DNA from: Antechinus flavipes
Taxonomy: Eukaryota
DNA: 64,000 bases
Direction: 5' to 3'
Assembly: GCF_016432865.1 (NCBI RefSeq)
Contig: NC_067403.1
Location: 247,814,001 to 247,878,000, forward strand
Every line of letters starts with the position of its first letter. The first letter of the stretch is position 1. Below, piece by piece: positions 10,004 to 58,390 of the stretch. The position numbers and the translations under genes are program-made. Under the pieces are notes generated by a model. It was not told the DNA's origin, did not search any database, and worked only from the letters and a program-made list of their open reading frames with translations.

Positions 10004-10710
10004 ACCTCTTCTTTCCAGCATGTCTAAATCCATCAGTCATCTGAGGGAAGAGCTGATCAGCAGTCTGCTTTTGTCCTGAGATGCTCCTGTGCCCAGCTAC
10101 AACAGAGCTCAATTGCTTTCTTTCTACTTTCTCATTGATTTAAATGGAGTGAGATTACATGATTTTCACAGGATATTATGAGTAACTAGAAAGAAGAGAT
10201 CCTGCCTACTGGATATTCCCTTTTCTTTTACTCTCTGGCTAGATCTAATAGAACTAAAGGTGGGAACAGATACTGGTATCCTTCTCTACCTGGGGTCTTA
10301 GAGTTGAGACAGCTTTAGTGTATAGTGATCATATGTACCATGAGTACTTTCTAGACTAAGATTCAGGATGCTTCTGCTGAATGAAAAAAGCCAACAAGGG
10401 TAATCCCTATTGACTGCAATCATAGTACAGTCATGTTTTTCTTTAATCAAGTTATTTACAGTCTTCTCTGGATTCTCTCTCAGAGGAATGGGTCCCTGAA
10501 GCAGAGGGTTTGGGGAAAACTTTGTGAATTGAGGACAACTCAGGTAAAGTTAATGGACATTCATATCTCTATAGGCTTATTCAGTGGCCATCCCAACAGG
10601 AGCCTGGACACTTGTAGAAGGGAATCTTGCTCTCTTATCACCTCTTTTTTTCTCTTCTCCATCAGGGATCTTAGTTGTCTTCTAGTGAGTTTCTCCAAGG
10701 TGAAATGGCT
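10004..10710 (-). promoter_or_regulatory. Module A copy 1: putative promoter and non-coding exon 1 of G1
   Basis: Donor GAG/GTAATT (GT at 10005-10004), O/E-like TCTCAGAGGA 10478-10487, HD site TAATGG 10551-10556. Homologous to four other copies. Confidence 0.6.
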
Positions 10711-11099
10711 AAACTACAATTTTATATAAATTTATGAAGAATGTAGCTAAAGAGAGATAAGCTTCAGTTTTGTCAAGTGGAAAATGCCAAAAAAATTCTA
10801 ATTTGTTCAAAATTATTTAAAGTGTTTGCCCCCATATGAAGCCCTGAACCAGGTACTGAAGATAGAAGGCTAAAATGTAACACAGTGGCTCCCTTCAAGG
10901 AGCGCCTAGTCTTTTGGAGAGTGAGAAAGGAAGAGATTTGCAAAGAGAAACACAATACTTTGATAGTGTCAAGGGGAGTATTCAAAGTACTCCAGAAAAA
11001 TTTGAGGGAAAGATTGCTTCCAGCTCAGAGGATCAGAAAAAGCTCCTGCAAGTAGGTAGCATCTAATAGAGGCCTTGGGAAATCAGTTAGTAATAATTG

Positions 11100-11330
11100 T
11101 TGTTCATTCAAGCATTCTAAGGCTTGAAAATCATTGTAATCTGTTGTTTTATTTGATCCTATCAACAACTCTGTGAAGTAGACTCTATTATTTCCATTGT
11201 AGTGATGAGAAAATTGAGACACAAAGACTAAAGTGACTTGTCAAAAGTTACACAGGAAATAGCTGAGACTAAATTTGAACTAAGGTCTTTATGACGACAT
11301 ACATAGCACTCTACCCATTGGACAATCAAG
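11100..11330 (-). mobile_element. MIR SINE (duplicate about 24160-24375)
   Basis: gatcctatcaacaactctgtgaagtag...gatgagaaaattgagacacaaagactaaagtgacttgtc. Confidence 0.65.
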
Positions 11331-13407
11331 CTGCTTTCCTTAGCACGCCTGTTTGATGTGATTAGTTCCCAGGTGCCTTAATGGGGTACACAGAGAAAAT
11401 TGAGACCTGCTCAAAGTTTCCCAAATGCTGTTCTCTTTATTCTTTGGATATTCTCTGAAGCATTAGTAATTTTTTTTCTTGTCCTCATCCCTGGCAGCAT
11501 TTCTCAGGTGGGAAGCTGACTTCCTGCATTTCTTTTGGCTGCAGTGTCCAACAGAAGAATAAGCTCTTGACATCTCTATGCTTCTAAAAGATTGAGATTG
11601 TTACCCAGAAAATGCTCAGAGAAATCAGACCAACTCCATTTTCTATTTCAGATTCTCATGGAGTCCAACTAAACGCCTGTGAATTAAAAGTTTCATTCTC
11701 TCTAGTGCACTTGATGATCCTTGAATACAGTGAATGCATGAAAAAATGTTCTTCAGCTCTGAGTGTCTATCTGGGTGAACTATGATTTGGGGAATACTGG
11801 AAATCCAGACAGAGAAAACCAAGCTCTCCAATGGTAGGAGATTACATGGGTGGAGATTTGCCAGTTATTCTCCTTTCTCAGATTGTCCCTGATTCATTGT
11901 CTTTCTTTTTGGCTCCGATCAAAACTCATTTGTATCATATATTTCTCTGGTAAAGCTGTTGGCTTTCTAGGACAATATACAAAGTTTATTGAAGACATGG
12001 GCTGTCATTAAAAAATCAATACTTTTTTTTATATAAGTAAAACCAAATACTATTGATATTGAGCTCTTCCTTGTGATAAAAACAAACAACAACAACAAAA
12101 AAACCTATCATCCAAATCACTTCACTTGACAGCAAAACAATTTTCTATGCTTTTGAGAATACATTTTAAAAAAAAATCTTATATGACCAGCTCTTAGGTT
12201 ATCACCAGCTCTTATCACCTTACAAATAGCGGAATAATAATAAAATGAATGAATAATAATAAATCTTTATTTCTATTTATCTATGCATTTTGTATTTTTA
12301 ATTTGTATCCACAAGGATAGATTCTGTGTATTCTCTGATTTTTAAAATCTCTTTTTGTGTCAAACTCCAAGCTGTATACGTAGGAAATGTTTACTGTGTG
12401 TTTATACTTTAAAGGGTCTAGCACAGTGCTTGGACATTTGCAAGTGTCTTATACTTGTACAACGTATGAGAAAATGAATGAATGAATGAAGAGCGCTCCA
12501 AAACATCATAAAACACAATCAGAAAAACCTTTCTTCCTAAAGCTAACTATTATGGATAACAGCTGACATCAATCAGTCTAAGCTCTCTGAAACTAACCTA
12601 TATTTCTATATTGACAAATCACTTTCTTTCCCATTGTCTAATGCAATTTATGCATGGCCAATATAAAGGAGTTGGAACAGTTGTTGTTATACACTTATAA
12701 AAGTCAATTCATTTGCTGACTTGGAAGTGCTGGGATTTCCTATCATATGGAATGTAGATTGTACCTAACTATCTCCTTCTGGCCTCAGGCTGACTCCATT
12801 GTTTCTGAGAAGGAAAGAATATCAATTAAGGCTTGTTTTTGGAAAATCTGAGCATAATGGAAGGCATCTGTCTGGTTTTCTAGGGCAAACGTGTTTACAG
12901 TAACACAATAAATCCCAAAATTCCAATGGAAATAAAACAGCAGCAGTGGAGATCTTGGAGTGGCAGGGGAAGACTCAAAGGAATAAAAAGCCTTGATAAT
13001 GGATACTATTTATCATGCTGCATTCTCATCTTAAAACTTCCTTTATTTCCAAGCACGTTTATAGTTCAATAAAGTGTTTGCACATACATGTTTACATTTG
13101 TGTGTATGTGTACCTGTATGTGCATGCGTATCCTCATCTATATCTCTAGCTATTTATATGTATGTACCTGAGTCTTTGGATCCAACCAGATGCACTTGTG
13201 ATAAGGTAGTTTGCTTTGCTACCTGACATTGTTCATTGACAATGTGAGTGTTCTTCCAGTTTGTAGTAAAACCTGAACTTCTGGAGAATAAAGTTGGGTG
13301 AGACAAAGACTTTTTACTCTTTGTCTTGCCAGAAATTCAGGTGAAGAATTATTCCATCTTCATCCCAGAAGAAGCACCACAAATAATAATTTTACTTTTG
13401 CCTCCTG

Positions 13408-14591: not shown

Positions 14592-15539
14592 CTATCTATT
14601 CCTGCTCACAACTTTTTTCAGAGCATTTTTGACATCCTTGTTCCTAAGGGTATAAATGATGGGATTAAGCAGTGGGGTTACAAAAGTATAGACCAAGGCA
14701 AGCATTCGATCCTCTTCTTCTCTGGTGCTTGATGGAGGACGGAAATAGACCAAACTGCAGCAGCCATATTGTATCAGGACTACTGTAAGATGGGAGGAAC
14801 AGGTAGAGAAGGCTCGCTGGCGACCCTCAGCTGAACGAATGTGCAAGATGGTGTTGGTTATGAAGACATAGGTGATGCAGATGAGCAGGAAAGGGGCGGT
14901 CAGTACAAGGATGCTTACCACATAGACAACAGCCTGGGGAATATGAGTATCAGCACAGACCAGCCTTAGAACAGGTGGTACATCACAGAAAAAGTGCTTG
15001 ATCACCCTGAGGTGTCCACAGAAGGGCAGAGTAAAGACCAGGCATGTGAGTTGCAAGGCAAGGAAAAGAGCCAGCATCAAGGAGCCACCTACCATCTGGA
15101 TACACAGCTTCTGGGTCATGATGAGAGTATAGTGTAAAGGATGACAGATGGCCACATAGCGGTCATATGCCATGACAGCCAATAGGAAACAGTCAGTCCC
15201 ACCAAGAGTTACAAAAAAGAACATTTGGATCCCACATCCAGCCAATGTGATGGGGTTTTGGGATCCAAAGATGTTGGAGAGCATCAATGGTACCAGAGTA
15301 GTGGTATAACAGATCTCCAGGAAGGATAGGTTGGACAGGAAGAAGTACATAGGGGTGTGTAAGGAGCTATGGGTGAACACAGCGCAGATGATGGCAGTGT
15401 TTCCACAGAGAATCATCATATAAAGAAGGAGAAAGAAGCAGAAGAGGAGGGCCTGGATCCTGGGGGAAGTAGTGAACACTTGGAACACAAATTCAGTGGG
15501 GCCAGACTGGTTGATCTGGAGAGTGTAGGGAGAAGACAT
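14592..15539 (-). CDS. Olfactory receptor G2, OR10Q1-like paralogue (315 aa)
   Basis: Intact ORF with all OR motifs. Splice acceptor tttctatctttctttggcag lies 7 nt upstream of the ATG. Confidence 0.93.
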   Translation of the reverse strand: MSSPYTLQINQSGPTEFVFQVFTTSPRIQALLFCFFLLLYMMILCGNTAIICAVFTHSSLHTPMYFFLSNLSFLEICYTTTLVPLMLSNIFGSQNPITLAGCGIQMFFFVTLGGTDCFLLAVMAYDRYVAICHPLHYTLIMTQKLCIQMVGGSLMLALFLALQLTCLVFTLPFCGHLRVIKHFFCDVPPVLRLVCADTHIPQAVVYVVSILVLTAPFLLICITYVFITNTILHIRSAEGRQRAFSTCSSHLTVVLIQYGCCSLVYFRPPSSTREEEDRMLALVYTFVTPLLNPIIYTLRNKDVKNALKKVVSRNR

Positions 15540-18200: not shown

Positions 18201-18264
18201 ATTGATTGATTGCTATGTGCTTGCTATAGCTATGGTAGTATATGAGATAAAAAGGAAGAACTGA

Positions 18265-21186: not shown

Positions 21187-21223
<37 letters not shown>

Positions 21224-21278: not shown

Positions 21279-23045
21279 TTTATCATTTTTACTATCAGAA
21301 TACATGGGTATTCCAGATCTCTCTACCTGAGTAACCATGAGTAAGATCATTTCTCTTTTTCTTGCTTTCCTCATGTAACAGCAAGGAATTGGATTAGATA
21401 ATCTTTAAGGTCCTTTTCACCACTAAGTCTATGATGCTATGAGATCCTGTTCCATGCATTCATTTAGCGATTTAGGTGAAGGATTGTGAAATTTGGTTTA
21501 AATAACTTTCTGAGGATAATCTCTTTTTCAGGAATTATAGAGATGAATATGTCCTGTAGCCTGCTCCTGAGGGATCCCACTTCATCATTATAGGGCAGAT
21601 GCTTGGCTGTGACTTAAGAAATTGAGATTCCTTGGGTTTGAGGCTCTAAGCTTAGGGCGAATTAACAAAGGAGAAGGGAGCACTAAGAATTGGCTGATAT
21701 ATTTGACCACAAAAGTCGGAGGACTTTTCTGGTTCTGTGGTATTATGAAGTCTGTCTGAGTTAACTTAATCATTGAAGGAACAAACATTAATTGAATATC
21801 TATTATGTGCCCAGCAGTATATCTAGTGCTATCTAGAGGATACAGAGAAATGGGAAAAATGGGCCCTGCTCTTAAGTAACTGGAGTCATTGAATGTCAGA
21901 GCTGGAAGGGACCTTAAAGAGTATTAGGTTTATCACCCTTTTAATTTTACAGATGAGAAAAATGAGGCACATGGCACAGGAGTGTTTCATGTAACAGTCA
22001 GAAAGACCTGAATTTGAATCTTGGCTTAGACTTTTACTAGCTATGTGGCTACAGGCGAACTAATCTCTCCAAGCCTCAAAGGGATAGGACTGGATTGTCC
22101 TCTAAGGGAATGTTCAGTTATAACTGGAGTGGAATGAATTATTGCCCAATATGACATGGCAGTTTAGTAGAAGAATTATCTTTAGAACTCATATGTCTTT
22201 ATTCGCATGTCTTTTTTGTACTTCAATTTGAGCCATTGAAACACATGATAGATGGAGATCTTGAGAATTGGATCCAGTGACAATAAGATGGGAGAGTATG
22301 TCTAATTGGTCTACTTTTTTATATATTTAACATTTATTATTGTGAACCTAATAACCATCCATAAAACAAATAATATATAAAAAGAAAATTGCGTAAAAAA
22401 TCTTGAATTTATATAACACTCGTTCAGAAACATTTATATGTACACAAATATATATATATATATATATTCACACATATATAACAATTTAATGATTTATAAA
22501 AATTTTTGTGTTCTCTTTTACATTTCTCTTTAATTTCTTCTCTGAATTTGAAATATTTCCTTGATGTTCTTTTTTCTTCATGTTACCTATCATTGCCCAT
22601 TAATCTACTGACTGATAACTGTCCCCCATGTCTCCAAGAAGTTTCCTTCAAGAGAAACCTTCTTCCTTTATTACAAATATGGACAGTCTATCCAAAGAAA
22701 TGAACATATTATTCATATCTAAGAAAGTACATCTATGGATTTGATTGATATCAAAGATTCTTGTTGCTTCTAACCATAGTCCTGCATGAGGTCCAAATAG
22801 GCTGGCTTATACATATTTCTATGATAACCCCTGAAAAGTCCATTAGGATGAAAAGAACATTAGAGTTGAATGCCAAACCCCTCAGTCAATTATATTTTCT
22901 TGGCCAGACATTTCCTTTCACTGGGATTCAGTTTTCTTCTTTGTAAAAGGAGAAGGTTTAGACTGAATTAATTCTAAGGGACTTTCCCTGCTCCAAATCC
23001 TGAGATCTCAAGTTAATAAGTAAATAAAAAGGAAGCAGTGAAATT

Positions 23046-23750
23046 ACCTCTTCTTTCCAGCATCTCTGAATCCATCAGTCATCCGAGGGAAGAGCTGATC
23101 AGCAGTCTGCTTTGTCCTGAGATGCTCCTGTGCCCATCTACAACAGAGCTCAATTACTTTCTTTTTACCTTCTCACTGATTTAAATGGAGTGAGATTACA
23201 TGATTTTCAAAGGGTATTATGAGTAACTAGAAAAAAGAGATGCTGCCTAATGAATATTCCCCTTTCTTTTACTCTCTGGCTAGGTCTAATAGAACTAAAG
23301 GTGGGAATAGATAATGGTATCCTTCTCTACAAGGGGTCTTAGAGTTGAGATAGCTTTAGTGTAGAGTGGTCATATGTACCATGGACACTTTCTAGACTGA
23401 GATTCAGGATGCTTCTGCTGAATGAAAAAAGCCAACAAAGGTAATCCCTGTTGACTCCAATCATAGTCTAGTCATGTTTTACTTTAATCAGGTTATTTAC
23501 GGACTTCTCTGGGCTCTCCCTCAGAGGAATGGGTCCCTGAAGCAGATGGTTTGGGGAAAACTGTGAATTGAGGACAATTCAGGTAAAGCTAATGGACATT
23601 CATATCTCTATAGGCTTGTTCAGTAGATATCCCAACTGGAGACTGAAGACCAGTAGAAGGGAATCTTGCTCTCTTTATCACCTCTTTTTTTTTTTTCTCC
23701 CCTCCATCAAGAATCTTAGTTGTCTTCTAGTTAATTTCTCCAGGGAAAAA
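23046..23750 (-). promoter_or_regulatory. Module A copy 2 (duplicate of the G1 module) now upstream of G2
   Basis: Donor GAG/GTAATT (23047-23046), CCTCAGAGGA 23519-23528, TAATGG 23590-23595, second O/E TCTCCAGGGA 23737-23746. Confidence 0.58.
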
Positions 23751-25701
23751 TGGCTAAACTACAATTTTATATCAACTTATGAAGAATGTGGCTAAAGGGA
23801 GTTAATTTTCAGTTTTGCCAAGTGGAAAAATGTCAAAAAATTCTAATTCATCCAAAATGATTTAAAGTGTTTGCCATATATAAAGCATTGAACTAGATAC
23901 TGAAGATAGAAGGATAAAATGTAATAGAGTGGGCTCCCCTTAAAGAGCTCCTACTCTTTTGGAGAGTGAGAGAGGAAGAGATTTGCAAAGAGAAACACAG
24001 TACTTTGATAGTGTCAAGGGGAATATTCAAAGTACTCCGGAAAAATTTGAGGGAAAGATTGCTTTCAGCTCAAAGGATCAGAAAAAGTTCCTGCAAGTAG
24101 GTAGCAACTGATATAGGCCTTAGGAAATCAATTAATAATAACTGTAGTTCACATTTACATAGCACTCTAAGATTTGCAAATCATTGTAATCTTTTGTCTT
24201 ATTTGATCCTATCAACAACCTTGTGAAGTAGACACTATTATTTCCATTTCAGTGATAAGAAAATTGAGACACAAAGAGTTAAGTGACTTGTCAAGAGTTG
24301 CACAATTAGGAAATATCTTAGACTGGATTTGAACTAAGGTTTTCATGATGACATACATAGCATTCTACCCACTGGACAAGCAAGCTGCTTTCCCTAGCAT
24401 GCCTATTTGACGTGATTAGTTCCCAGGTGCCTTAACACATTGGGGTGGACAGAGAAAATTGAGATCTGTTCACAGTTTCCCAAATGCTGTTCTTTTTATT
24501 CTTTGGATATTCTCTGAAGCATTAGTAATTTTTTTCTTGTCCTCATCCCTGGCAGCATTTCTCAGGTGGGAAGATGACATCCTGCATTTCTTTTGGCTGC
24601 AGTGTCCAACAGAAGAAAAAACTCTTGATATCTTCCTCTCTCTACCCAGAAAATGCTCAGAGACATCAGAACAATTCTATTTTGTATTTCAGATTCTCTT
24701 GGACCCCTCACTAAACTCTCTGTGAATTAAGGGTTTCATTCTCTCTGGTGCTCTTGTGTCTCATGATCCTTGAGTACAGTGAATACATGAAAAAAAATGT
24801 TATTCAACTTTGAGTGTCAATCTGGGTGAAGTATGATTTGGGGAATACTGGAAGTCCAGACAGAGAAAACCAAGCTCTCCAGTGCTAGGAGATTACATGG
24901 GTAGAGATTTGCAAGCTTTTCTCCTTTCTCAAATTGTCCTTGACTTGTCTTTGCTCCTTCAAAAACCATCTGTTTCATAATATGTCTCTGGTAAAGCTGC
25001 TGGACTTCTAGGACAAAGTACAAAGCTTGTTGAAGGCATAGGCTGTTATTAAAAAATCAAAACTTTTTTTTTTTTTTTACCTTAGGTAAAACCAAATACC
25101 ATTGATATTGAGCTCTTCCTTATAATTAAAAAAAAAAAACAACAATCACCCAAAGCTTTTCATTTGACAGCAAAACAATTTTCTATGCTTCTGGGACTAC
25201 AATTTTTTTTTATCTTATATGACCATCGCTTAGTTCATATCCTTACAAATAGTAGGAAAATCCTGCAGGTAGAACTGATATTGGGGGAGAGGTAGAGACA
25301 GACACATTTAATACTTTATATGTTGACTATAGAAGGCCTTAACATCAAAGCAATTCCACAAGCTCTTTATCTTATCAGGCATAATAGATAGAGCTGATTT
25401 TGCTATCAGAAAACTGGGTCTGAATTTTGTCTCTGAAATTTACTACCTCTGATATAAAGATAATGGTTGTGCTTGCCATAGACTAAGATACTTGTTTAAA
25501 AAACGAAATAAAACAAAAATTGTAAGTCTTTTTGCTACACTTAAAATATAACTCCAATGACCCTAATTTCTTCTCTACTTTCAGGAACTGTCAGAAAACT
25601 CCATTAGAATTTTAATTCTTGTTGGCAGGGACTATTAAAAATTATTCTTCATAAGCATGTAATAAATGCTTTTAAAATTGATTGATATTAAATAGATTTG
25701 A

Positions 25702-26649
25702 CTATCTATTCATGCTCACAACTTTTTTCAGAGCATTTTTGACATCCTTGTTCCTAAGGGTATAAATGATGGGATTAAGCAGTGGGGTTACAAAGGTATA
25801 GACCAAAGCAAGCATTCGATCCTCTTCTTCTGTGGTACTTGATGGAGGACGGAAGTAGACTAAACTGCAGCAGCCATATTGTATCAGGACTACTGTAAGA
25901 TGGGAGGAACAGGTAGAGAAGGCTCGCTGGCGGCCCTCAGCTGAACGAATGTGCAAGATGGTGTTGGTGATGAAGACGTAGGTGATGCAGATGAGCAGGA
26001 ATGGGATGGTCAGGAGAATGATGCTTACTACATAGACAACAGCCTGGGGAATATGAGTATCAGCACAGTCCAGTCTTAGTACAGGTGGTACATCACAGAA
26101 AAAGTGCTTGATCACCCTGAGGTGCCCACAGAAGGGCAGAGTAAAGACCAGGGATGTGAGGTGCAAAGCAAGAAAAAGAGCCAGGATCAAGGAACCACCC
26201 ACCATCTGGATACACAACTTCTGGGTCATGATGAGAGTATAGTGTAAAGGATGACAGATGGCCACATAGCGGTCATATGCCATGACAGCCAATAGGAAAC
26301 AGTCAGTCCCACCGAGAGTTACAAAAAAGAACATTTGGATCCCACAGCCAGCCAAAGTGATGGGGTTCTGGGATCCAAAGATGTTAGAGAGCATTAATGG
26401 TACCAGAGTAGTGGTATAACAGATTTCCAGGAAGGATAGGTTGGACAGGAAGAAGTACATAGGGGTGTGTAAGGAGCTATGGGTGAACACAGCCCAGATA
26501 ATGGCAGTGTTCCCACAGAGAATCATCATATAAAGAAGGAGGAAGAAGCAGAAGAGGAGGGCCTGGATCCTAGGGGAAGTGCTGAACACTTGGAACACAA
26601 ATTCAGTGGGGCCAGACTGGTTGATCTGGAGAATGTAGGGAGAAGACAT
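25702..26649 (-). CDS. Olfactory receptor G3, OR10Q1-like paralogue (315 aa), sister of G2
   Basis: Intact ORF, 12 aa differences from G2 by manual alignment, with the same acceptor position. Confidence 0.93.
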   Translation of the reverse strand: MSSPYILQINQSGPTEFVFQVFSTSPRIQALLFCFFLLLYMMILCGNTAIIWAVFTHSSLHTPMYFFLSNLSFLEICYTTTLVPLMLSNIFGSQNPITLAGCGIQMFFFVTLGGTDCFLLAVMAYDRYVAICHPLHYTLIMTQKLCIQMVGGSLILALFLALHLTSLVFTLPFCGHLRVIKHFFCDVPPVLRLDCADTHIPQAVVYVVSIILLTIPFLLICITYVFITNTILHIRSAEGRQRAFSTCSSHLTVVLIQYGCCSLVYFRPPSSTTEEEDRMLALVYTFVTPLLNPIIYTLRNKDVKNALKKVVSMNR

Positions 26650-28298
26650 CTCTTACCTGCCAAAGAAAAATAGAAAAATTGGTCCAGTTACTTGATATAG
26701 CCAAAAATGAAATCATAGCTTTGTGGAATCCACAGGGACTTTTATAGATCACCTTAGAAAAATCATCCTACATTTCTGTGTGTTAATATTTTTTTTTACC
26801 TATTTGGTTAAGCTTTTACCCTCTAAGGTCTCTTGCAATTTTGATTTTTTGTGTTCAATATTCTAACATGAAGAAATCAAACAGATGATTTTTGATAGGA
26901 ATTTTAGCTTTGACATTCTATATTCTATTTTTTAAAATGGCTTCATGGTGATGTCCTTGGTTTAAATAATAGATATTCTGCTTCTTCCTCATTTTCAGAA
27001 AGTCATCTTTTATGACAAATAATTTAATAATAATTGTGGTTGTTTTGTTGCTGTTCAGATGTTTGATTACATCTGCTTCTTTGTGTCCTCATGGACCAAA
27101 GCTTGCCAGACCCTACTAAGCTCTACTCCTTTTCAAAGTCTTTCCAAGTTCACGTTCATTGTTTCCATCACACTAGCCATCCATTTTATCCTTTGCCATT
27201 TTTATGTTCTAGATTGCATATTATTTTTAGATTGCATATTAATTTTGAACTAATCATGGAGTGTAGTACAAGATGTTAGACTAAGCCCCAAATCTCTAGG
27301 TGGTTTTCAAGTTTTTAAATGATATTCTAATGAATAAAGAATTCTTTCCTATGTAATTTTTGTTTTTAGGTTGATCACATATGTTTTACTTTCCTTGGTT
27401 TCTGTTTCCCATTGAACTTTTATATTTTTTGACCTGTGTCAAGTGGTTTTGATATTGTTAGTTTTTAATAGATTCTAAATTCTAGGTCATTTCCAAACCT
27501 GTTTTTTCTAAGATTTTTTTCCACCTTTCCCATTCTTTATGAATCTATCTATTAGACATTTCTATTGATGTTTAAGAGGATAATTATTTTTTTACCTTTC
27601 CGATAGCAAAACTCTAAAATGAGTTGCTAACAGAATTGGATCTAGAAGGTACATTAGTGAACTCCTAGCCTAACTCCTTATTTGATAGAAAAGTTAATTA
27701 GATTCTTGAGAGGTCAAAAAACTAAGCTAGAGTCAAAGAACTAGTAAATAAGAGCCAGGATTTCAATCCAGATTCTTTGACTCTAAATGCTCTTTTTCTT
27801 TCACTTCAAGATGTGAAGAATATGGTTACTGCTCATGAATATCATAGATACTCATGGAAATGCAATGGTGTCAAACTCAAATAGAAATAGGGGCCACTAA
27901 ATGACACATAAAGATACTTATCGACTGTATTTTGACTTAGAAAACCACATATTAACATTATCTATTTTCTATTGATTTTTATTTATTTTGTTAAATGTAT
28001 TCCATTACATTTAATTTTAGGTAGAGCCACACATAGTAGCAATATATTTGACATCTGTATATCACACCCCCATTACAGGCAGGGAGACTGAGGATCATAG
28101 AATTTAAATTATTCATTTGGTATTCTGAATTCTAAGGTCATTTCTGACTCTTCACTGTTTTCTATTCTTAAAAACAAACAGGCATTTGATGCAGGAGTTC
28201 TCGTATGGATTATTTTTTCCTTAAATTTTGTCCTACTCCTTTCTCACAACACCATGTTTTAAAGATAAAAGTGTTGAGAAACCAGACTTAAATCTTAC

Positions 28299-28447: not shown

Positions 28448-29059
28448 CTATAAAAGCAACAATTGTAAGAGAAGGAAAAATGAAGAAAGAGATTAAAGAT
28501 AAAATACAAGAAAGAAGGTTAAGAAAGAAAGCTGTTAACTGCTTCCAGAAAAATAAGTATAAGAGAAGTATGTATGGAATAATTTTACATATTTGTATAT
28601 ACACGTGTGTGTGCTCTTGTGTGTTGTATGGTTAGGTATTTCTAGAGTAGGGGAGAGTGGAAAAATGATGGAGCTCAAGCATCATCTTTTGCAGAGAGCT
28701 CTTCATGATCCCACCAAGAGCTAGTATCTTCTCTCCCAAACTAATTTCTGTTTAAATAATTGGAATATATTTATATTTGAGATCATATATTTATAGAAAC
28801 ATATTATACCTATTTATTTGTTTATACTTGTTTCCTCTTTTGGATGCAAGCCACTTGAGAGTAGGGATCATTTCATTATTTGTACTTGTATCTTCTGTTC
28901 CCAGAATAGTACTTACCATAGTATAAACAGATGGTGCTACTTGTTTATTGTAAAGGTAAAGGGTTGGATAAGACCTCTGATCTTCCTTGAATGTTCTAAA
29001 TCTAAGATCCTATGATCTCTTGGGATCAAATTTTCCTCCCAAACAGTAGACTAACTGAT

Positions 29060-29410
29060 TGGATTGTGAACTAGGGACTCTGGATTTAGGATTTCCTAAT
29101 AGAACCATTTTTTAAAACAGATTAAAGAGATATGGGTCATGTCATGCCCCAAGGGAAGCTGTTTCACCATTGCAACCCCTAGTTTGGGTTGTTCAGTTCA
29201 ACCCAGGCAGCTGGACTTAGTGCTGTTTGCTAGGGTTGTAGAATCTGAGACTACAAGGGATGGTCTATATAGGGGAAAAGAAGTATTCAGGATTGGATCA
29301 TAATATGACTCCTTCCTCTCAAGTATCTGATGGATCAAAGTTGGAGTTCAGCCTGGAGCTGTCTGGGCTACCTGAAGAGCTCTCCATTGATTGAGCCAAC
29401 AAATATTTAT
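29060..29410. promoter_or_regulatory. Module B, copy upstream of G3
   Basis: GGGACTCTG 29074-29082, EBF-type CCCCAAGGGA 29147-29156, CAGCTG 29208-29213. Confidence 0.45.
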
Positions 29411-31390: not shown

Positions 31391-31709
31391 ATTGGAAATG
31401 CTTTTCTCATTTCAACTAGTAGTTATCAAAGTGTGTTTGGTAACCTCTAAGTTCCTTGAAATCTTTTTAGGGTTTCTGTAAGGTCAAAAAATTTCCACAA
31501 AATTTCTAAGACATTTTAATTTTTGATATATTAATAACTATAACTAAAATAAACAAAAAATCTTTAGGGTCTCAATGATTTTGCAGAGCATAAGGGGGTT
31601 CTGTGAGTAGCACTAGAGTAGGTGATCTCTAAGATTCTTCCAACTCTAAATCCCAATATCTTTATTTAGTCAATTAAACAAAAATAAAGAAAAAAAATTA
31701 TATTCCCTT

Positions 31710-32415
31710 ACCACTATTCAGTGACTCTGACTCCATCAGCCATTTAAGGAAAATCGTTGTTTCATGGGCCTTTGTCTTGAGATGCTCCAGAGACAGTGTT
31801 CATAAAACACTTTGCAATTCTCAACTTCTTGTTGAGCTAAATGGAATGAGAACCCATGACATTCAAAGGAAGTAGGGTTTCCTGTAAAGGAGAGACCTTG
31901 GCTGGTGCAGGTACTCCCTGCCTCTGCTTTCTGGCTGGATTTCATTCAGTTGCAAATGGATAAAAATTTCAGTGTCCTTCACAAGCTAAGAGCCTTCAAG
32001 TACAATTGCTTTTTGGGTAAAGATCAACAGAGTTTTCTTAGATTGTGGTACAAGTGTATTCCCTGCATCAAGTAACCCAGTTATTTGACACAGTACCTCT
32101 ATCCATCAACAGGATAGACATTGTCTTCTTATCCAGGTTATTTTGGGCTCTCTTTGGGTTATTTCTCAGGGGAATGATTCGGTGAATCACATGTTTTTCC
32201 CTAGAGCTGTCTTAAAGTGGGTTTGAGATTTGGGGAAAGCTTTCTGAATAGAGGACAACAAAGACAAAGTTAATGGGCAGTCACATCCTCCAGGGTTTTA
32301 TCTGTGGAGGCCACAGGTGGTATGTGGGGAATAGGAGGAAATAAGTTTGCATTCCAATCTGGTCCCCAGCAGAGGCTTAATCTGTGTATCAATAATTCTC
32401 TCCCAGGGGAATGTT
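31710..32415 (-). promoter_or_regulatory. Module A copy 3: putative promoter and exon 1 of G3
   Basis: Donor GTG/GTAAGG (31711-31710), TCTCAGGGGA 32164-32173, TAATGG 32271-32276, perfect EBF-type TCCCAGGGGA 32401-32410. Confidence 0.65.
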
Positions 32416-32749
32416 AAAGATGCAAATTTATGGAGACTTAAGATTCCTGAAAATTTTAACATTGTGGAAAGAGTTTTTGTATGAGAAGGGAGGGGAAGCA
32501 GGAAAGTGGTGGAGAATCACAAGTCCTGGATGATAGTTGGTTTTTAGATCTTTTAGCTCATTCATTTTTCAATAAATACTGCCATACATTACATTGATCC
32601 TTGTTTTATAACCAATAAATTCAAATAAACAGAATTCACTTTAAAAATGATTTCTTTGAATATTTCATGCAGCTCTAGAACTATCATTTTTATCCAATAA
32701 TAGCCCTTAATAAAGTGCTTGTTAATGAGATGATTTAGGCAATTCTAAT

Positions 32750-36411: not shown

Positions 36412-36431
36412 GGGAGAGGGGGGGAGGGAGG

Positions 36432-36500: not shown

Positions 36501-36501
<1 letters not shown>

Positions 36502-40925: not shown

Positions 40926-41887
40926 TCACAGATTCTCAAAGGCCGCCTTTTTGCTCATGGCTTTTTTCAGAGCATTTTTGACATCCTTGTTCCTTAAGGT
41001 ATAAATGACGGGATTGAGGAGGGGAGTGACAAAGGTATAGACCAATGCAAGATACCGATCTTCATCTGCAGGAGTGCTTGATGGGGGTCGAAAGTAGACC
41101 AAACTGCAGCAGCCATATTGTAGCAGGACCACAGTGAGATGGAAGAGCAGGTGGAAAAGGCTCGCTGGCGTCCCTCAGCTGAAGGAATGTGCAAGATGGC
41201 GATGGTAATGAAGACATAGGAAATGCAGATGAGTAGGAAAGGGGTGGTCAGCACAAGGATGCTTATCACGTAGAGGACAGCCTGTGGCACACGAGTGTCA
41301 GCACAAGCTAGCTGTAGGACAGGTGGTATATCACAGAAGAAATGGTTGATCTCCAGGAAGCGTCCACAGAAGGGTAGGGTGAAAACCAATGATGTGAGTG
41401 GCAGTGAAAGAAAAAAAGCCAGACCTAGGGGTCCAGCCACCATTTGGGTACACAGCTGTGGGGTCATGATGAGAGTGTATTGTAGGGGATGGCAGATGGC
41501 TACATAACGATCATATGCCATGACAGCCAATAGGAAACAGTCGGTGCTGCCAAGGGTGGCAAAAAAGAACATCTGGGTTGCACAAGCAGTCAATGAGATG
41601 GGTTTCCTTTCCCCCATGATGTTGGAGAGCATCAGAGGTACCAAAGTAGTTGTATAACAGATCTCCAGGAAGGACAGGCTGGACAGGAAGAAGTACATGG
41701 GGGTTTGCAGGGAGATGTTTGTGTACACAGCCCAGATAATGGCAGCATTCCCACAGAGAATCATTACATAGAGAAAAAGGAAGAAGCAGAAGAGGAGAAC
41801 CTGAATTTTGGGGGAAGAAGTGAACACTCTGAATATAAATTCAGTGGGGCCAGATTGGTTGAGATGAATAGTCGCAGGAGAAGACAT
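40926..41887 (-). pseudogene. OR10Q-like G5 with one 1-bp deletion in TM6 (frameshifted, or a sequencing error)
   Basis: 962 nt versus 963 nt in G6/G7. Plus strand reads gagatGGaagag at 41141-41142 where G1/G6/G7 read gagatGGGaagag. The ORF track shows the two halves in different frames. The track start at 41899 is a TTG in the intron; the ATG is at 41887. Confidence 0.85.
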
Positions 41888-47720: not shown

Positions 47721-48848
47721 GCCTATTACATACTGTGTAACATGTGTAGTGCTGCATGAGATGCAGAGAAAAAGCAGGTTCCTTCCTAAGGACTATGAGA
47801 CATATCATGCATGAATTGGGAGGGACTCTTAGAGGATAGTGATGAAAGGAACACTGGCACATAACCCATGGAATGCATCAGAGCTGAAGTCAGGTCAACA
47901 AGCATTTATTAAGTGCCTACTGTGCACCAAAAATTGCATTATTTGAAAAATAGCTCATACTTCCACATTTTTATAGATGAAAAATAAGGTTTAGAAAAGA
48001 CAAGTGATATACCAATTTGGCAGCAAAGCTGGGTATAGAACTGCAAGGAATTACAGTGAAAGGCTCTTTCATTTATACCAGTCACTGCACATAAATATTA
48101 GTGATTTTCTAAACTTGACGATGCAAGATTAGGATACAGAAAAGAATTTCAGTGTGGCATAATAGAAAGGACTCAGTTCTAGGACTGAGCCCCAGCTTGG
48201 TCATGCTATAACTGTGTGACTTTAGGCAAGTGACTCCATCGTCCTAGACCTCAGTATTCATTTTAGCAAAATGAGAGAGTGATTACCAATGAGCTTGAAG
48301 AAATGTCTTACTTCTAAAATAACAACAAAAACAACTAGCATTTGTATAGCTTTTAGGTTTGCAAAATGATTTGCTATTTAAATGAACTTGATTAATAGAT
48401 GACAGCTATAAAATCATTCTGGCACAGAGATTGAGTAGAAGATGATGATGCCAGAATAGTTTAGTCTAGGGGACAGGATCCTAGATCTGCCACTGGAGGA
48501 TCTTAGTTTCAATCCTAACCTGGCTAAGGAAAGTCACTTCTCTATAAGTCTCTGATTTCTCATAAAATAAAAGACTTGGATTAGATCTATGACTTTTAAT
48601 CTGAACAATTTTTTCACATCTCAATAACATTATTTCAATGTAATTGATTTCTGTTATATTCCTATTGATCTCATTTGTTGAATTTAATGATTCTGAGAAG
48701 TCAGAAGTCCATTAGCTTCAGTAGGCTGCCAAAGGGGTCCGTGAAATCTATGGCTGCAGAATGTCTAAGGGTACCACCCAGCTTTTAAAAAAATATGATG
48801 CTTATCTAGACAACTAAATGAAAATAAAGAAAAAAAGTCATATTCCTT

Positions 48849-49530
48849 ACCACCATCCAATGCTTCTGCCTCCATGAGCCATCTAGCAAAAGGCTCTGAT
48901 CCAAAGACTATCTTGGACATGCAATGCTTTGACCTCAGTCCTTTCCAAAAATACACTGATTTTCTTCAACCTCTTTGTTTTGTGTTCAATGGGATGATGG
49001 CCCATGACTTTCCAAGCAGTAGACTTTACTGGAAAGGAAAGTGTTTCAGTTCTATGCCTTTGCTTTCTGATTTGATTTCTTTCAGAAGGCAAGGAGAGAC
49101 TTAGGTTCCCTTCATTACATGGTGACCTGAGAGAGACAACACTTTTAGTGAATGGAGTTGGTCAGGGATATCACAGAGTCTTCCTAGATGCAGACTAAGC
49201 TGTCTCACAAATTAAAAACCCAAATAAGTACAAGTTTTGCTGTGTCCATTCATAGTGTCACTCTGGCTACTTTGGCAATGTAATTGAGTTTTTTCTTTGA
49301 ATAGTTTCTCATGGGAGTGGTTTGCTGAACTACAGGAGTTTTCCCAATAGTCCCTCTAAGTGAATCCCAGACAAGATTAATGGGCACTGAGATCCTCTCT
49401 GTATGTGATGTGGAACCACTATTGATATCTAGGGACTAATAGGAGGGAGTCTCATTCTTCTATCCTCCCCTTTCTTCCATCAAGGGCTTCCTGAGGCCTG
49501 TTCCAGTTTATCTTAGTAGTGGGAAAACAT
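48849..49530 (-). promoter_or_regulatory. Module A copy 4: putative promoter and exon 1 of G5
   Basis: Donor GTG/GTAAGG (48850-48849), TAATTG 49281-49286, TCTCATGGGA 49307-49316, TAATGG 49378-49383, CTAGGGACTAAT 49429-49440. Confidence 0.62.
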
Positions 49531-49821
49531 GTGTTTATCCCAGCACTGGAAGAGCCCCGTATAGGAGATCAAAAAACTGGGAACAACATTCCAGTTTGGT
49601 CACTGAACAAAGTGTATAGCTCTGGGGTAAGGTACTAAGCTCTTGTGGTTGGATTGCTATGCAGTGGTTCCCATATATGTAGTCCCTCATTTGGCCCTTC
49701 TTCTTTTCAACCAACATTTATTAATCATTTTCATAGCAGAGCCTGATATCATAAAGCTCTGATATTGTCTTCAAGGAGTTTATAGTCTGCTGTCATTCCA
49801 GAATAAGTTCATTTCTTTTTT

Positions 49822-51680: not shown

Positions 51681-52643
51681 TCACAGGTTCTCAGAGGCTG
51701 CCTTTTTGCTTATGGCTTTTTTCAGAGCATCTTTGACATCCTTGTTCCTCAAAGTATAAATGACAGGATTGAGGAGGGGAGTGACAAAGGTGTAGACCAA
51801 TGCAAGATACCGATCTTCATCTGCAGGAGTGTTTGATGGGGGTCGAAAGTAGACCAAACTGCAGCAGCCGTATTGTAGCAGGACCACAGTGAGATGGGAA
51901 GAGCAGGTGGAGAAGGCTCGCTGGCGTCCCTCAGCTGAAGGAATATGCAAGATGGTGATGGCAATGAAGACATAGGAAATGCAAATAAGCAGGAAGGGGA
52001 TGGCCAGTACAAGGATGCTTATCACATAAAGGACAGCCTGTGGCACACGAATGTCAGCACAAGCTAGCTGTAGGACAGGTGGTACATCACAGAAGAAATG
52101 GTTGATCTCCAGGAAGCGTCCACAGAAAGGCAGGGTGAAGACCAATGATGTGAATGGCAATGAAAGAAAAAAAGCCAGACCCAGGGGTCCAGCCACCATT
52201 TGGGTACACAGCTGTGGGGTCATGATGAGAGTGTATTGTAGGGGATGGCAGATGGCCACATAGCGGTCATATGCCATGACAGCCAATAGGAAACAGTCGG
52301 TGCTGCCAAGGGTGCCAAAAAAGAACATCTGGGTTGCACAAGCAGTCAATGAGATGGGTTTCCTTTTCCCCATGATGTTGGAGAGCATCAGCGGTACCAA
52401 AGTAGTTGTATAACAGATCTCCAGGAAGGACAGGCTGGACAGGAAGAAGTACATGGGGGTTTGCAGGGAGATGTTTGTGTACACAGCCCAGATAATGGCA
52501 GCATTCCCACAGAGAATCATTACATAGAGAAAAAGGAAGAAGCAGAAGAGGAGAACCTGAATCTTGGGGGAAGAGGTGAATACCCTGAATACAAACTCAG
52601 TGGGGCCAGATTGGTTGAGATTAATAGTAGCAGGAGAAGGCAT
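51681..52643 (-). CDS. Olfactory receptor G6, OR10Q1-like paralogue (320 aa from MPSPAT)
   Basis: Intact ORF. Acceptor ttttctttgatag lies 5 nt upstream of the ATG at 52643; the track extension to 52679 is intronic. Confidence 0.92.
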   Translation of the reverse strand: MPSPATINLNQSGPTEFVFRVFTSSPKIQVLLFCFFLFLYVMILCGNAAIIWAVYTNISLQTPMYFFLSSLSFLEICYTTTLVPLMLSNIMGKRKPISLTACATQMFFFGTLGSTDCFLLAVMAYDRYVAICHPLQYTLIMTPQLCTQMVAGPLGLAFFLSLPFTSLVFTLPFCGRFLEINHFFCDVPPVLQLACADIRVPQAVLYVISILVLAIPFLLICISYVFIAITILHIPSAEGRQRAFSTCSSHLTVVLLQYGCCSLVYFRPPSNTPADEDRYLALVYTFVTPLLNPVIYTLRNKDVKDALKKAISKKAASENL

Positions 52644-56284: not shown

Positions 56285-56580
56285 TGTTCTGGGGACTCTG
56301 GTTTTAGATCCCTTTAAGAAAAATCAAAATTTTAACCATCTAATGAATTGCAAGTGCCCTCAATCCTGTCCAAAGGGAATCAGCTTCCTCATTAGTCAAG
56401 ATAGGTTTGACTATTCCCCTTGCTACCTTCTTCCAGACAGCTGGAATAAATGTTTACTGCTACCCTGAGTCTACACAAAATGGTCACACTCACAATCACA
56501 AGAGGTTGAAGCTTTTACAGGAGCTCTGTTCTGCTTGAAGAACTATCCATTGAGTCCTTAAGAAATACTTATTGAATGCC
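56285..56580. promoter_or_regulatory. Module B, copy upstream of G6
   Basis: GGGACTCTG 56292-56300, TAATGA 56341-56346, TCCAAAGGGA 56369-56378, CAGCTG 56438-56443. Confidence 0.45.
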
Positions 56581-57706
56581 TACTACATACTGTGTAACAT
56601 GTGTAGTGCTGCATGAGATGCAGAGAAAAAGCAGGTCCCTTCTTAAGGACTGTGAGACATATCATGTGTGAACTGGGAGGGACTCTTAGAGGATAGTGCT
56701 GAAAGGAACACTGGAACATAGAATGCATCAGAACTGGAGTCAAGTCAATAAGCATTTATTAAGTGCCTACTGTGCACCAAGAATTGCATTGTTTGAAAAA
56801 TAGCTCACACTTCCACATTTTATAGATGAAATATGAGGTTCAGAAAGGACAAGTGATAGAGCAATTTGGCAGCAAACCTGGATATAGAACCGAAGGGACT
56901 TGAATTACAGTGAAAGGCTCTTTCATTTATACCAATCACTTCACACAAATATTAGTGATTTTCCTAAACTTGAAGATGCAAGATTAGGATACGGAAAAGA
57001 ATTTCAGTGTGACATAATGGAAAGGACTCAGTTCGGGGGCTGAGCCCCAGCTTGGTCATGCTATAACTGTGTGACTTTAGGCACAGTGTTCATTTTTGTA
57101 AAATGAGAGAGTGATTACCATTGAGCTTGAAGATATTCCTCACCTCTAAAGTAACAACAAAAACAACTAGCATTTGTATAGCTTTTAGGTTTGCAAAATG
57201 GTTTGCCTATTTAAATGAACTTGATTAATAGATGACATCTATGAAATCATTGTGGCACGGAGATCAAGTAGAAACAGACAGGATAGTTGATGGATCCTTC
57301 TAAAATGATGATGCCAGAACAGCTTAGTCTAGTGGACAGGATCCTAGATCTGTCACTGGAGGATCTTAGTTTCAATCCTAACCTGGCTAAGGAAAGTCAC
57401 TTCTTATAAGTCTCTGATTTCTCATAAAATAAAAGACTTGGATTAGATCTATGATTTTTAATCTAAACAATTTTTTCACATCTCAATAACATTATTTCAA
57501 TGTAATTGATTTCTGTTGTATTCCTAATGATCTCATTTGTTGAATTTAATGATTCTGAGAAATCAGAAATCCATTAGCTTCAGCAGGCTGCCAAAGGGGT
57601 CCATGAACTCCATGGCTGCTGAAACTCTAAGGGTACCACCCAGCTTAAAAAATATGATGCCTATCTAAACAACTAAATGAAAATAGAGAAAAAAGTCATA
57701 TTCCTT

Positions 57707-58390
57707 ACCACTATCCAATGCTTTTGACTCCATGAGCCATCTAGCAAAAGGCTCTGATCCAGAGATTGTCTTGGATATGCAATGCTTTGATCTCAGTCCT
57801 TTTCAAAAATACACAGATTTTCTTCAACCTCTTTGTTTTGTGTTCAATGGAATGATGACCCATGACTTTCCAAGGCAGTAGACTTTACTGGAAAGGAAAG
57901 TGTTTCAGTTCTATGCCTCTGCTTTCTGATTTGATTTCTTTCAGAAGGCAAGGAGAGACTTAGGTTCCCTTCATTACATGATGACCTGAGAGAGACAACA
58001 CTTTTAGTGAATGGAGTTGGTCAGGGATATCACAGAGTCTTCCTAGATGCAGACTAAGTTATCTCACAAATAAAAAATCCAAATAAGTACAAGTTTTGGT
58101 GTGTCCATTCATAGTGTTGCTCTGGCTACTTTGGCAATGTAATTGAGTTTTTTCTTTGAATAGTTTCTCATGGGAGTGGTTTGCTGAACTACAGGAGTTT
58201 TCCCAATAGTCCCTCTAAGTGAATCCCAGGCAAGATTAATGGGCACTGAGATTCTCTCTGTATGTGATGTGGAACTACTTACTACTGATATCTAGGGACT
58301 AATAGGAGGGAGTCTCATTCTTCTATCCTCCCCTTTCTTCCATCAAGGGCTTCCTGAGGCCTGTTCCAGTTTATCTTAGTAGTGGGAAAA
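57707..58390 (-). promoter_or_regulatory. Module A copy 5 (duplicate of the G5 module) now upstream of G6
   Basis: Donor GTG/GTAAGG (57708-57707), TAATTG 58140-58145, TCTCATGGGA 58166-58175, TAATGG 58237-58242. Confidence 0.6.

What the first reader, a model, noticed from the sequence alone, without database searches (positions are those of the whole stretch)
10004..58390. One conserved promoter/first-exon module per OR gene, detectable across old paralogues
Seen: a ~600-700 bp non-repeat block recurs at 10004-10710, 23046-23750, 31710-32415, 48849-49530 and 57707-58390. Conserved anchors include ccat(c/g)ag(t/c)cat, tttgtc(c/t)tgagatgctcc and aatgg(a/g)(g/a)tga. Each copy has a minus-strand splice donor at the homologous position (GAG/GTAATT or GTG/GTAAGG), an O/E-like (T/C)CTCA(G/T)(A/G)GGA site and a TAATGG site. 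The O/E-to-HD gap is 61-63 bp in four copies and ~97 bp in copy 3. Known: mammalian OR promoters lie kb upstream of the single coding exon and are marked by O/E (EBF) and homeodomain (Lhx2/Emx2, TAATNN) sites. Inference: this is the OR10Q-family promoter plus exon 1. Module relationships mirror gene relationships: copies 3-5 group together like G3/G5/G6, and the divergent copy 1 pairs with the divergent G1.
Basis: partly seen in the sequence, partly recalled or inferred. Interest (0 to 1): 0.72.

Follow-up and report, generated by a model that had tools for sequence, protein, structure and literature searches.

The report
Upstream exon-and-promoter block of smell-receptor genes
Each gap between neighbouring smell-receptor genes in this antechinus cluster holds one copy of an 800-base block that looks like the usual mammalian receptor-gene front end (regulatory sites plus a short non-coding exon), which is ordinary architecture and not yet backed by RNA data.

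Summary
Five collinear, same-strand copies of a ~0.8-kb block lie one per intergenic interval in a minus-strand array of OR10Q1-like genes of the yellow-footed antechinus. They are homologous across three old lineages (nhmmer E 1e-20 to 1e-38).

The promoter/first-exon reading is partly supported.
- For: each copy carries the best splice donor of its stretch at the same column.
- For: all six coding exons have an acceptor 4-8 nt before the ATG.
- For: across old lineages, detectable homology stops at the donor.
- For: in two independent young duplications the block has about half the mismatches of other non-coding DNA (p 2e-5 and 7e-5).
- For: O/E-like sites are about ten times denser in these blocks than elsewhere in the window.
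- For: the block is single-copy in three other dasyurid genomes.
- Against: no RNA run was available.
- Against: old-lineage identity (55-62%) is no higher than at fourfold-degenerate coding sites (57-65%).
- Against: a second conserved block with HD and O/E-like sites lies between each module and its coding exon.

The claim that modules mirror gene relationships fails. c1/c2 are 91% alike but their genes 81%; c2/c3 are 57% alike but their genes 95%. This is a new member of a known kind.

The parts
9942..10737 (-). Module c1, 8.45 kb upstream of the G1 ATG (1554). Young copy partner of c2.
22953..23781 (-). Module c2, 7.5 kb upstream of the G2 ATG (15539). It is a copy of c1, not of c3.
31581..32443 (-). 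Module c3, 5.06 kb upstream of the G3 ATG (26649). It has no young twin. Single contigs of three other dasyurid genomes span it at single-copy depth.
48734..49560 (-). Module c4, 6.96 kb upstream of the ATG of the frameshifted gene G4 (41887).
57581..58420 (-). Module c5, 5.07 kb upstream of the G5 ATG (52643). It is a copy of c4.
10006..10185 (-). Candidate non-coding exon of c1 (180 nt). Acceptor AG ends at 10186; donor G+1 is at 10005.
23048..23226 (-). Candidate non-coding exon of c2 (179 nt).
31712..31881 (-). Candidate non-coding exon of c3 (170 nt). Acceptor scores 14.2 bits and donor 9.2 bits. On its own it matches all five copies (E 1e-8 to 1e-11).
48851..49028 (-). Candidate non-coding exon of c4 (178 nt).
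57709..57887 (-). Candidate non-coding exon of c5 (179 nt).
32140..32300 (-). HD-to-O/E zone of c3: HD-like CCATTAA at 32270-32276 and O/E-like site at 32164-32173. Homologous sites: c1 10550-10556 / 10478-10487; c2 23589-23595 / 23519-23528; c4 49377-49383 / 49307-49316; c5 58236-58242 / 58166-58175.
32401..32410 (.). Exact O/E consensus site in the upstream part of c3. The only other exact sites in the window are at 49946-49955 and 58733-58742, about 1.0-1.1 kb upstream of the c4 and c5 donors.
26650..26672 (-). Polypyrimidine tract and AG acceptor 8 nt before the G3 ATG. Equivalent acceptors (G of AG) are at 1560, 15547, 41893, 52649 and 61405 for the other five genes.
592..1554 (-). G1, intact OR10Q1-like coding exon (320 aa).
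14592..15539 (-). G2, intact coding exon (315 aa), 95% identical to G3.
25702..26649 (-). G3, intact coding exon (315 aa).
40994..41887 (-). It has a 1-nt deletion at coding position 746 and so is probably a pseudogene.
51681..52643 (-).
60437..61399 (-). Its own module would lie beyond the window's end.
29025..29388 (-). Core of the second conserved block ('blk_a') between module and coding exon. Other copies are at 8012-8311, 17822-18181, 21444-21770, 47398-47694 and 56254-56551. Four copies carry TAATGA, then 10 nt, then an O/E-like site. There is no conserved donor.

Best explanation
Each module is the 5' end of the transcription unit of the OR10Q1-like gene that lies 5-8.5 kb further along the minus strand.

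Read on the minus strand, a module has three parts. First comes an upstream regulatory zone with a homeodomain-type site (CCATTA) and an O/E (EBF)-like site. Next come about 290 nt of weakly conserved sequence. Last comes a 170-180-nt non-coding exon bounded by a conserved acceptor and a conserved donor.

The donor is inferred to splice to the acceptor that sits 4-8 nt before the ATG of the single coding exon. This is the usual arrangement in mouse and human OR genes. Transcription is inferred to start either within the module downstream of the O/E-like site, making the exon the 3' part of a long first exon, or further upstream, making it an internal 5'UTR exon.

Shown here: homology, splice-site motifs, position, slower change than flanks in young duplicates, O/E-site enrichment, and single-copy status. 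Inferred only: transcription, use of the splice sites, and binding of EBF or Lhx2.
For: 1. There is one copy per intergenic interval, all on the genes' strand, with no other copy in 64 kb.
2. The donor is at the same alignment column in all five copies and is the best donor of each stretch. Only 17 donors of 9.2 bits or more exist on the whole minus strand, and three of them are these.
3. All six coding exons have a polypyrimidine tract and AG 4-8 nt before the ATG, scoring 8.6-12.7 bits.
4. The exon candidate alone and the HD-O/E zone alone each still match all five copies. The 100-140 nt beyond the donor match only the young twin, so old-lineage homology ends at the donor.
5. In both independent young duplications the module has fewer mismatches than other non-coding DNA: 91.4 vs 86.3% (odds ratio 0.59, p 2.4e-5) and 95.9 vs 92.2% (odds ratio 0.51, p 6.8e-5). 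In unit B it is the best-conserved window of the whole unit, above the coding exon.
6. Orthologous contigs of three other dasyurids show 3.3-4.5% substitutions over 31327-32499, against 4.2-6.1% in the intron pieces (Fisher p 0.03, 0.15, 0.21).
7. Matches to TCCCNNGGGA with at most one mismatch, counted on both strands, run at 3.4 per kb in modules plus blk_a and 0.32 per kb elsewhere. They exceed the blocks' own dinucleotide shuffles (p about 0.01-0.02). All three exact sites lie 0.7-1.1 kb upstream of a module donor.
8. Depth in the module bins equals one contig's depth, while neighbouring bins reach 1e3 to 3.6e5, so the module is not a young interspersed repeat. Its open stretches give no Pfam match and the window gives no Rfam match.
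9. The mouse benchmarks fit. TSSs lie on average 4.2 kb (0.2-24 kb) from the ATG, in repeat-poor, AT-rich DNA with O/E, HD and TATA sites (PMC3247239; PMC12547500). Also, 866 of 913 reconstructed mouse OR models have 5' exons (PMC4154679).
Against: - No RNA run holds this stretch and no spliced joint was seen. The one run guessed to be RNA cannot be told from low-coverage DNA.
- Between old lineages the module is 55-62% identical, no better than fourfold-degenerate coding sites at 57-65%. Long-term survival therefore needs no constraint.
- The cross-species deficit of substitutions is small and only borderline significant.
- The O/E-like sites of c1/c2 have two mismatches, and TAATNN is too short to carry weight.
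- The O/E-like site is about 455-475 nt upstream of the donor, which would make a rather long first exon.
- The conserved acceptor inside the module argues that the exon is not always first.
- c4 sits upstream of a frameshifted gene.
- A second block (blk_a) also carries an HD plus O/E-like pair and could be the real proximal promoter.
Confidence: 0.55

Rival explanations
1. The module is a neutral leftover. It is the part of the ancestral tandem-duplication unit that has not yet been deleted or overwritten by repeat insertions, and it has no present function.
For: - Old-lineage identity of the module (55-62%) equals that of fourfold-degenerate coding sites (57-65%).
- Other non-coding collinear blocks also survive: the blk_a cores, 46790-47110 matching 6444-6796, and the 3'-flank blocks 33294-35245 matching 50387-51315 (the last with higher scores than the module).
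- There is no transcript evidence.
- c4 lies upstream of a broken gene.
Against: - The module has about half the mismatches of other non-coding DNA in two independent young duplications.
- Donor and acceptor motifs are both kept in all three old lineages at the same columns.
- Homology stops at the donor.
- O/E-like sites are enriched over composition-matched shuffles.
- It is the strongest non-coding block shared by all three lineages.
Confidence: 0.2
2. The working proximal promoter is the second block (blk_a), 1.1-2.2 kb nearer the coding exon. The module would then be a more distal element, either an alternative promoter with an upstream exon or an enhancer.
For: - blk_a is collinear in every unit between module and coding exon. 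Its non-repeat core is homologous across lineages (E 1e-4 to 1e-6).
- Four of six copies keep TAATGA, 10 nt, then an O/E-like site; that tight spacing is, from my memory of M71/MOR23-type OR promoters (not checked here), more like them than the module's 60-96 nt.
- O/E-like sites exceed shuffles in the cores (6 observed vs 0.85 expected).
- Identity is raised in the B pair (95.4 vs 92.2%, p 0.006).
Against: - There is no donor at a shared position downstream of the sites.
- Identity is not raised in the A pair (83.6%, many gaps).
- In the G3 unit, blk_a is no better conserved than the intron across species (5.0-6.6% substitutions against 3.3-4.5% for the module contig).
- Its flanks look to me like old MIR-type SINE pieces. 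This is from memory and was not confirmed by copy number in the window.
Confidence: 0.15
3. The module is an ancient transposable-element fragment (for example a solo LTR or an old non-autonomous element) that was already in the ancestral unit. It evolves as such, whether or not it was later co-opted.
For: - No repeat library could be run, so an old family cannot be excluded.
- LTR-like elements can carry promoter and donor-like signals.
- The sequence just beyond the donor resembles, from memory, the start of a marsupial MIR-type SINE.
Against: - The five copies are at homologous positions, so they reflect one ancestral locus and not five insertions.
- There is no further copy on either strand in 64 kb at E<=10.
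- Depth is single-copy at 90% likeness or more in three dasyurid genomes.
- The open stretches show no reverse transcriptase, transposase or gag remnant.
- It changes more slowly than its flanks in the young pairs.
Confidence: 0.1

Closest known systems
Mouse and human class II odorant-receptor gene structure and promoters (Young et al. 2011, PMC3247239; Ibarra-Soria et al. 2014, PMC4154679; review PMC12547500)
   Same: - A single coding exon is preceded by short non-coding exon(s) several kb upstream, with the acceptor just before the ATG.
- The upstream region is AT-rich and repeat-poor, without a CpG island.
- O/E and homeodomain-type sites lie within a few hundred bp.
- The promoter is carried along in local duplications.
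   Different: - No TSS or splice junction has been mapped here.
- The O/E-like sites are imperfect in two copies.
- The exon has a conserved acceptor as well as a donor.
- The animal is a marsupial; my three literature searches, none of them aimed at marsupials, turned up no OR promoter work on one.
V1R promoter and upstream-exon conservation within subfamilies (Stewart and Lane 2007, PMC1955453)
   Same: Promoter regions and the 5' exon-intron junction are recognisably conserved among paralogues of one chemoreceptor subfamily. In that work a shared motif overlapped the splice donor of the upstream exon.
   Different: It concerns a different receptor family and organ, and the TSSs were mapped by RACE. 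Here conservation between old paralogues is no higher than at synonymous sites.
OR enhancers with HD and O/E sites (H, P and other 'Greek Island' elements; J element, PMC5638857)
   Same: Homeodomain and O/E sites co-occur in a conserved non-coding block inside an OR cluster.
   Different: Those are single elements serving many genes. As far as I recall, the two sites there are closely juxtaposed. Here there is one block per gene with splice signals, and the sites are 60-96 nt apart in the module and 10 nt apart in blk_a.

Membership tests
Mammalian OR gene 5' end (promoter plus non-coding exon) | Lies upstream of the coding exon on the same strand, within the range seen in mouse (0.2-24 kb, mean 4.2 kb) | tested here: met
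   Donor-to-ATG distances are 8451, 7508, 5062, 6963 and 5065 nt, all on the minus strand. The benchmark is from PMC3247239.
Mammalian OR gene 5' end (promoter plus non-coding exon) | Non-coding exon whose donor pairs with an acceptor just upstream of the ATG | tested here: met
   As sequence motifs only. The donor is at the same column in all five copies (7.3 or 9.2 bits), and acceptors of 8.6-12.7 bits lie 4-8 nt before all six ATGs.
Mammalian OR gene 5' end (promoter plus non-coding exon) | Transcription start and splice junction seen in olfactory RNA | not testable with these tools
Mammalian OR gene 5' end (promoter plus non-coding exon) | O/E (EBF) site within a few hundred bp upstream of the TSS | tested here: inconclusive
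   O/E-like sites are conserved at one column (one mismatch in c3-c5, two in c1/c2) and are enriched against shuffles (p about 0.01-0.02). The TSS is unknown.
Mammalian OR gene 5' end (promoter plus non-coding exon) | Homeodomain (TAATNN) site near the O/E site | tested here: met
   TAATGG is invariant in all five copies, 60-96 nt from the O/E-like site. The motif carries little information.
Mammalian OR gene 5' end (promoter plus non-coding exon) | Repeat-poor, AT-rich, no CpG island | tested here: met
   Depth is single-copy over 31500-32499 while neighbouring bins are 1e3 to 3.6e5. GC is 0.29-0.48 in 50-nt steps.
Mammalian OR gene 5' end (promoter plus non-coding exon) | More conserved than its surroundings | tested here: inconclusive
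   Yes in the young paralogue pairs (p 2e-5 and 7e-5). Weakly so across dasyurid species (p 0.03-0.21). No when measured against fourfold-degenerate sites between old lineages.
   A 9.9-14.2-bit acceptor is conserved in all five copies 170-180 nt upstream of the donor. Its use cannot be tested.
Interspersed repeat (transposable element) | Many copies, in both orientations, at non-homologous places | tested here: not met
   There are only the five collinear same-strand copies in 64 kb, and depth is single-copy at 90% likeness or more in three other genomes.
Interspersed repeat (transposable element) | Match to a curated repeat library (Dfam/RepeatMasker) | not testable with these tools
   No repeat library is on hand. 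The open stretches show no Pfam transposon domains.
OR10Q subfamily of olfactory receptors | 7tm_4 domain, and close relatives named OR10Q1-like by the sources | tested here: met
   7tm_4 matches at E 1e-40 to 1e-56. Members of the 90% clusters are named 'olfactory receptor 10Q1-like' in devil, dunnart, bilby, monito del monte and antechinus. These are automatic names and orthology to human OR10Q1 was not tested.

The most novel reading that the evidence does not exclude
Both young tandem duplications are out of register with the module-to-coding-exon unit, so one daughter gene each time sits behind a copy of its neighbour's module. G2 and G3 encode 96%-identical receptors behind modules only 57% alike. 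G1 and G2 encode 82%-identical receptors behind modules 91% alike. G5 sits behind a copy of the module of the now broken G4. If the modules are working promoters, this locus is a natural promoter-swap experiment. It would separate what the promoter and what the coding sequence contribute to how often, and in which zone, an odorant receptor is chosen.
Probability: 0.3. Interest if true: 0.5.

Novelty: new member of a known kind. Interest (0 to 1): 0.3.

Why it matters
The finding gives testable coordinates for the 5' exons and likely regulatory zones of six marsupial OR10Q1-like genes. In my three literature searches, none of them aimed at marsupials, I came across no OR promoter work on this group. 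It also shows that 'still alignable between old paralogues' is not evidence of constraint in this cluster. The out-of-register duplications offer natural promoter swaps that olfactory RNA-seq of any dasyurid could read out. Otherwise it is the expected mammalian OR gene architecture.

Tried and rejected
- RNA evidence: the one run search found no RNA holder. The one read-laying run gave only contigs and no module-to-coding-exon joint. Run X20, guessed to be RNA, has pieces on the coding exon, blk_a and the module, but also thin depth elsewhere, so I did not count it as expression.
- Rfam: no family in the window.
- Pfam on the ten longest stop-free stretches of c1, c3 and c4: nothing.
- Coding potential of the exon candidate: stops in all frames in every copy.
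- A TATA-like (A/T)AAATAAC lies 20-27 nt downstream of the O/E-like site, and a weak GT lies at alignment column ~588. I saw both by eye, but neither is conserved well enough to place a TSS or a small first intron.
- Poly(A) signals between the upstream gene and the module are too frequent in this AT-rich DNA to be decisive. Only AATAAA at 34830, 50905 and 59674 is shared, and it sits at the end of a conserved 3' block.
- My recollection that blk_a's flanks and the post-donor stretch are MIR-type SINE pieces was not borne out by extra copies in the window, so I leave it as a lead.
- A tree test of 'c3 groups with c4/c5' was rejected as meaningless, because three lineages without an outgroup have no topology.
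- The N run at 7514-7668 was left alone.

Full report
**Setting.** The window holds a tandem array of olfactory-receptor genes, all on the minus strand. Coordinates run from the stop codon to the ATG.
- Five coding exons are intact: G1 592-1554, G2 14592-15539, G3 25702-26649, G5 51681-52643 and G6 60437-61399.
- G4 (40994-41887) has a 1-nt deletion at coding position 746.
- An old relic with 13 or more stops lies at about 38972-39998.

The exact proteins are in the public collection. Members of their 90% clusters are named 'olfactory receptor 10Q1-like' in Tasmanian devil, fat-tailed dunnart, bilby, monito del monte and Antechinus flavipes.

The five stretches align end to end. Each copy, used alone as an nhmmer query, finds the other four and nothing else, always on the + strand and over nearly its full length. 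Between the three old lineages (c1/c2, c3, c4/c5) E is 1e-20 to 1e-38. A profile of all five finds no sixth copy at E<=10. Anchor 2 is poor in c4/c5, and the c1/c2 'O/E' sites have two mismatches to TCCCNNGGGA.

**Two ages of similarity.** The window contains two young segmental duplications:
- unit A, 5218-18939 matching 18951-30158, about 86% identical;
- unit B, 44260-52853 matching 52847-61606, about 92% identical.

c1/c2 (90.6%) and c4/c5 (96.3%) are simply parts of these units. Only the comparison between lineages (55-58%) speaks to old conservation. That comparison is not special in degree, because fourfold-degenerate sites of the coding exons are 57-65% identical between the same lineages. 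Anything from the ancestral unit that has escaped deletion should still be alignable, and other collinear non-coding pieces indeed are. Even so, the module is the longest and strongest non-coding block shared by all three lineages (75-137 bits).

**Anatomy, read on the minus strand**.
- A homeodomain-type site, CCATTA(A/G).
- 60-96 nt further, an O/E-like site.
- About 290 nt of weak conservation.
- A strong acceptor (polypyrimidine tract plus AG, 9.9-14.2 bits) at one alignment column in all five copies.
- 170-180 nt with stops in every frame.
- The donor, which is the best donor of each stretch.

All six coding exons carry an acceptor 4-8 nt before the ATG. Split into parts, the exon candidate alone matches all five copies (E 1e-8 to 1e-11). 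So does the HD-O/E zone alone (E 3e-10 to 2e-3). The 100-140 nt past the donor match only the young twin. Old-lineage homology therefore ends at the donor, as expected for an exon edge.

**Signs of constraint.**
- In both young duplications the module has about half the mismatches of the other non-coding DNA of its unit: A 91.4 vs 86.3% (p 2.4e-5), B 95.9 vs 92.2% (p 6.8e-5).
- In B it is the best-conserved window of its size in the whole unit, above the coding exon.
- In the B pair, the excess sits mainly in the part from the HD site to the acceptor.
- Across species, single contigs from three other dasyurid genomes span 31327-32499 with 3.3-4.5% substitutions, against 4.2-6.1% in intron pieces. 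This is a small deficit, significant in only one of three non-independent comparisons.

**Repeat test.** Laid contigs give one-contig depth over the module. Bins at 27100-27299, 27700-28099, 29900-30099 and 30900-31499 reach thousands to hundreds of thousands. The module is therefore not a young interspersed repeat. An ancient family cannot be excluded without a repeat library. Its open stretches have no Pfam match and the window has no Rfam match.

**O/E sites.** TCCCNNGGGA with at most one mismatch occurs 23 times in the window against 15 expected. Fourteen of these lie in the modules or in a second block described below. Density there is about ten times that of the rest of the window, and the sites exceed dinucleotide shuffles of the blocks themselves (p about 0.01-0.02, one copy per lineage). 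The only three exact sites lie 0.7-1.1 kb upstream of module donors.

**A second block.** Between each module and its coding exon lies 'blk_a': 8012-8311, 17822-18181, 21444-21770, 29025-29388, 47398-47694 and 56254-56551. Its core is weakly homologous across lineages. Four copies carry TAATGA, 10 nt, then an O/E-like site. It lacks a shared donor, and in the G3 unit it is no better conserved than the intron across species. It may be an alternative promoter or an intronic element, and I keep it as a rival.

**Gene relationships.** The modules do not mirror the genes. c1 and c2 are 91% alike, but G1 and G2 are 81% alike. c2 and c3 are 57% alike, but G2 and G3 are 95% alike. The reason is the register of the duplications. 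Unit A runs from G1's intron through c1 and G2 to 3.4 kb upstream of G2, so G2 now lies behind a copy of G1's module. Unit B ends 210 nt upstream of the G5 ATG, so G5 lies behind a copy of G4's module.

**What could not be done.** No repeat library or marsupial genome collection was on hand. I built and searched no joined exon model.

**Comparison with what is known.** In mouse, OR start sites lie on average 4.2 kb (0.2-24 kb) from the ATG. They sit in repeat-poor, AT-rich DNA where conservation rises and O/E, homeodomain and TATA sites are enriched, and recent duplicates can carry the promoter along (PMC3247239; PMC12547500). Most mouse OR genes have one or more 5' non-coding exons with alternative use (PMC4154679). 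V1R promoters and their upstream exon junctions are conserved within subfamilies (PMC1955453). The present block fits this known pattern.

**Verdict.**
- Observation: confirmed.
- Interpretation: partly supported.
- Most likely reading (0.55): the regulatory zone plus a non-coding 5' exon of each downstream OR gene. Whether the exon is first or internal is open.
- Novelty: a new member of a known kind.
- Interest: 0.3.

Noticed in passing
window 8012-8311, 17822-18181, 21444-21770, 29025-29388, 47398-47694, 56254-56551: A second collinear conserved block (blk_a) lies between each module and its coding exon. Four copies carry TAATGA, 10 nt, then an O/E-like site. G2's upstream region holds two copies because the unit A junction (18939/18951) falls between them.
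   Followed up: partly
It is probably a pseudogene, although ORF listing shows a 301-aa ORF.
   Followed up: yes
window 33294-35580: This looks like the 3' flank of a gene that is no longer there. Blocks 33294-33756 and 34801-35245 match the 3' flanks of G5 and G6, including a shared AATAAA at 34830, 50905 and 59674. Next, 35357-35579 matches 62499-62768 upstream of G6. About 2.4 kb, including a coding exon, seems to have been deleted.
   Followed up: partly
window 38972-39998: An old OR relic about 67% identical to the other genes, with 13 or more stops in every frame. It lies only 1 kb from G4 and has no module of its own.
   Followed up: partly
window 33294-33756, 44495-44854, 50387-50844, 53085-53470, 59166-59627: A ~400-nt element with five same-strand copies, two in each B unit. 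It may be an old repeat or another recurrent feature of the unit.
   Followed up: no
window 51681-52643 versus 60437-61399: The G5 and G6 coding exons are less alike (93.3%; fourfold-degenerate sites 84%) than their non-coding flanks (92.2%) and the module (95.9%). This fits the gene-conversion mosaic noted earlier (s1-189961), or diversifying change.
   Followed up: no
window 12200-14100: About 1.9 kb is present in unit A1 but absent from A2 (alignment gap). It is probably a later insertion between c1 and G2, and it explains why c1 is 3.9 kb rather than about 2 kb from the upstream gene's stop.
   Followed up: no
window 27100-27299, 27700-28099, 29900-30099, 30900-31499: Contig depth in three dasyurid genomes reaches 1e3 to 3.6e5 here. 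These are young high-copy repeats inside the G3 intron, one of them ending about 80 nt from the module.
   Followed up: partly
window 29044-29378, 31849-32024, 32112-32361, 26563-26621: The only unique pieces of run X20 (guessed to be RNA; organism H, about 5-6% diverged) fall on blk_a, the module and the coding exon. I could not tell whether this is expression or chance in a thin DNA run.
   Followed up: partly
window 32181-32241: Five differences are shared by all four laid runs within 60 nt. They fall inside the spacer between the O/E-like and HD sites, in and beside the extra ~34 nt that c1/c2 lack.
   Followed up: no
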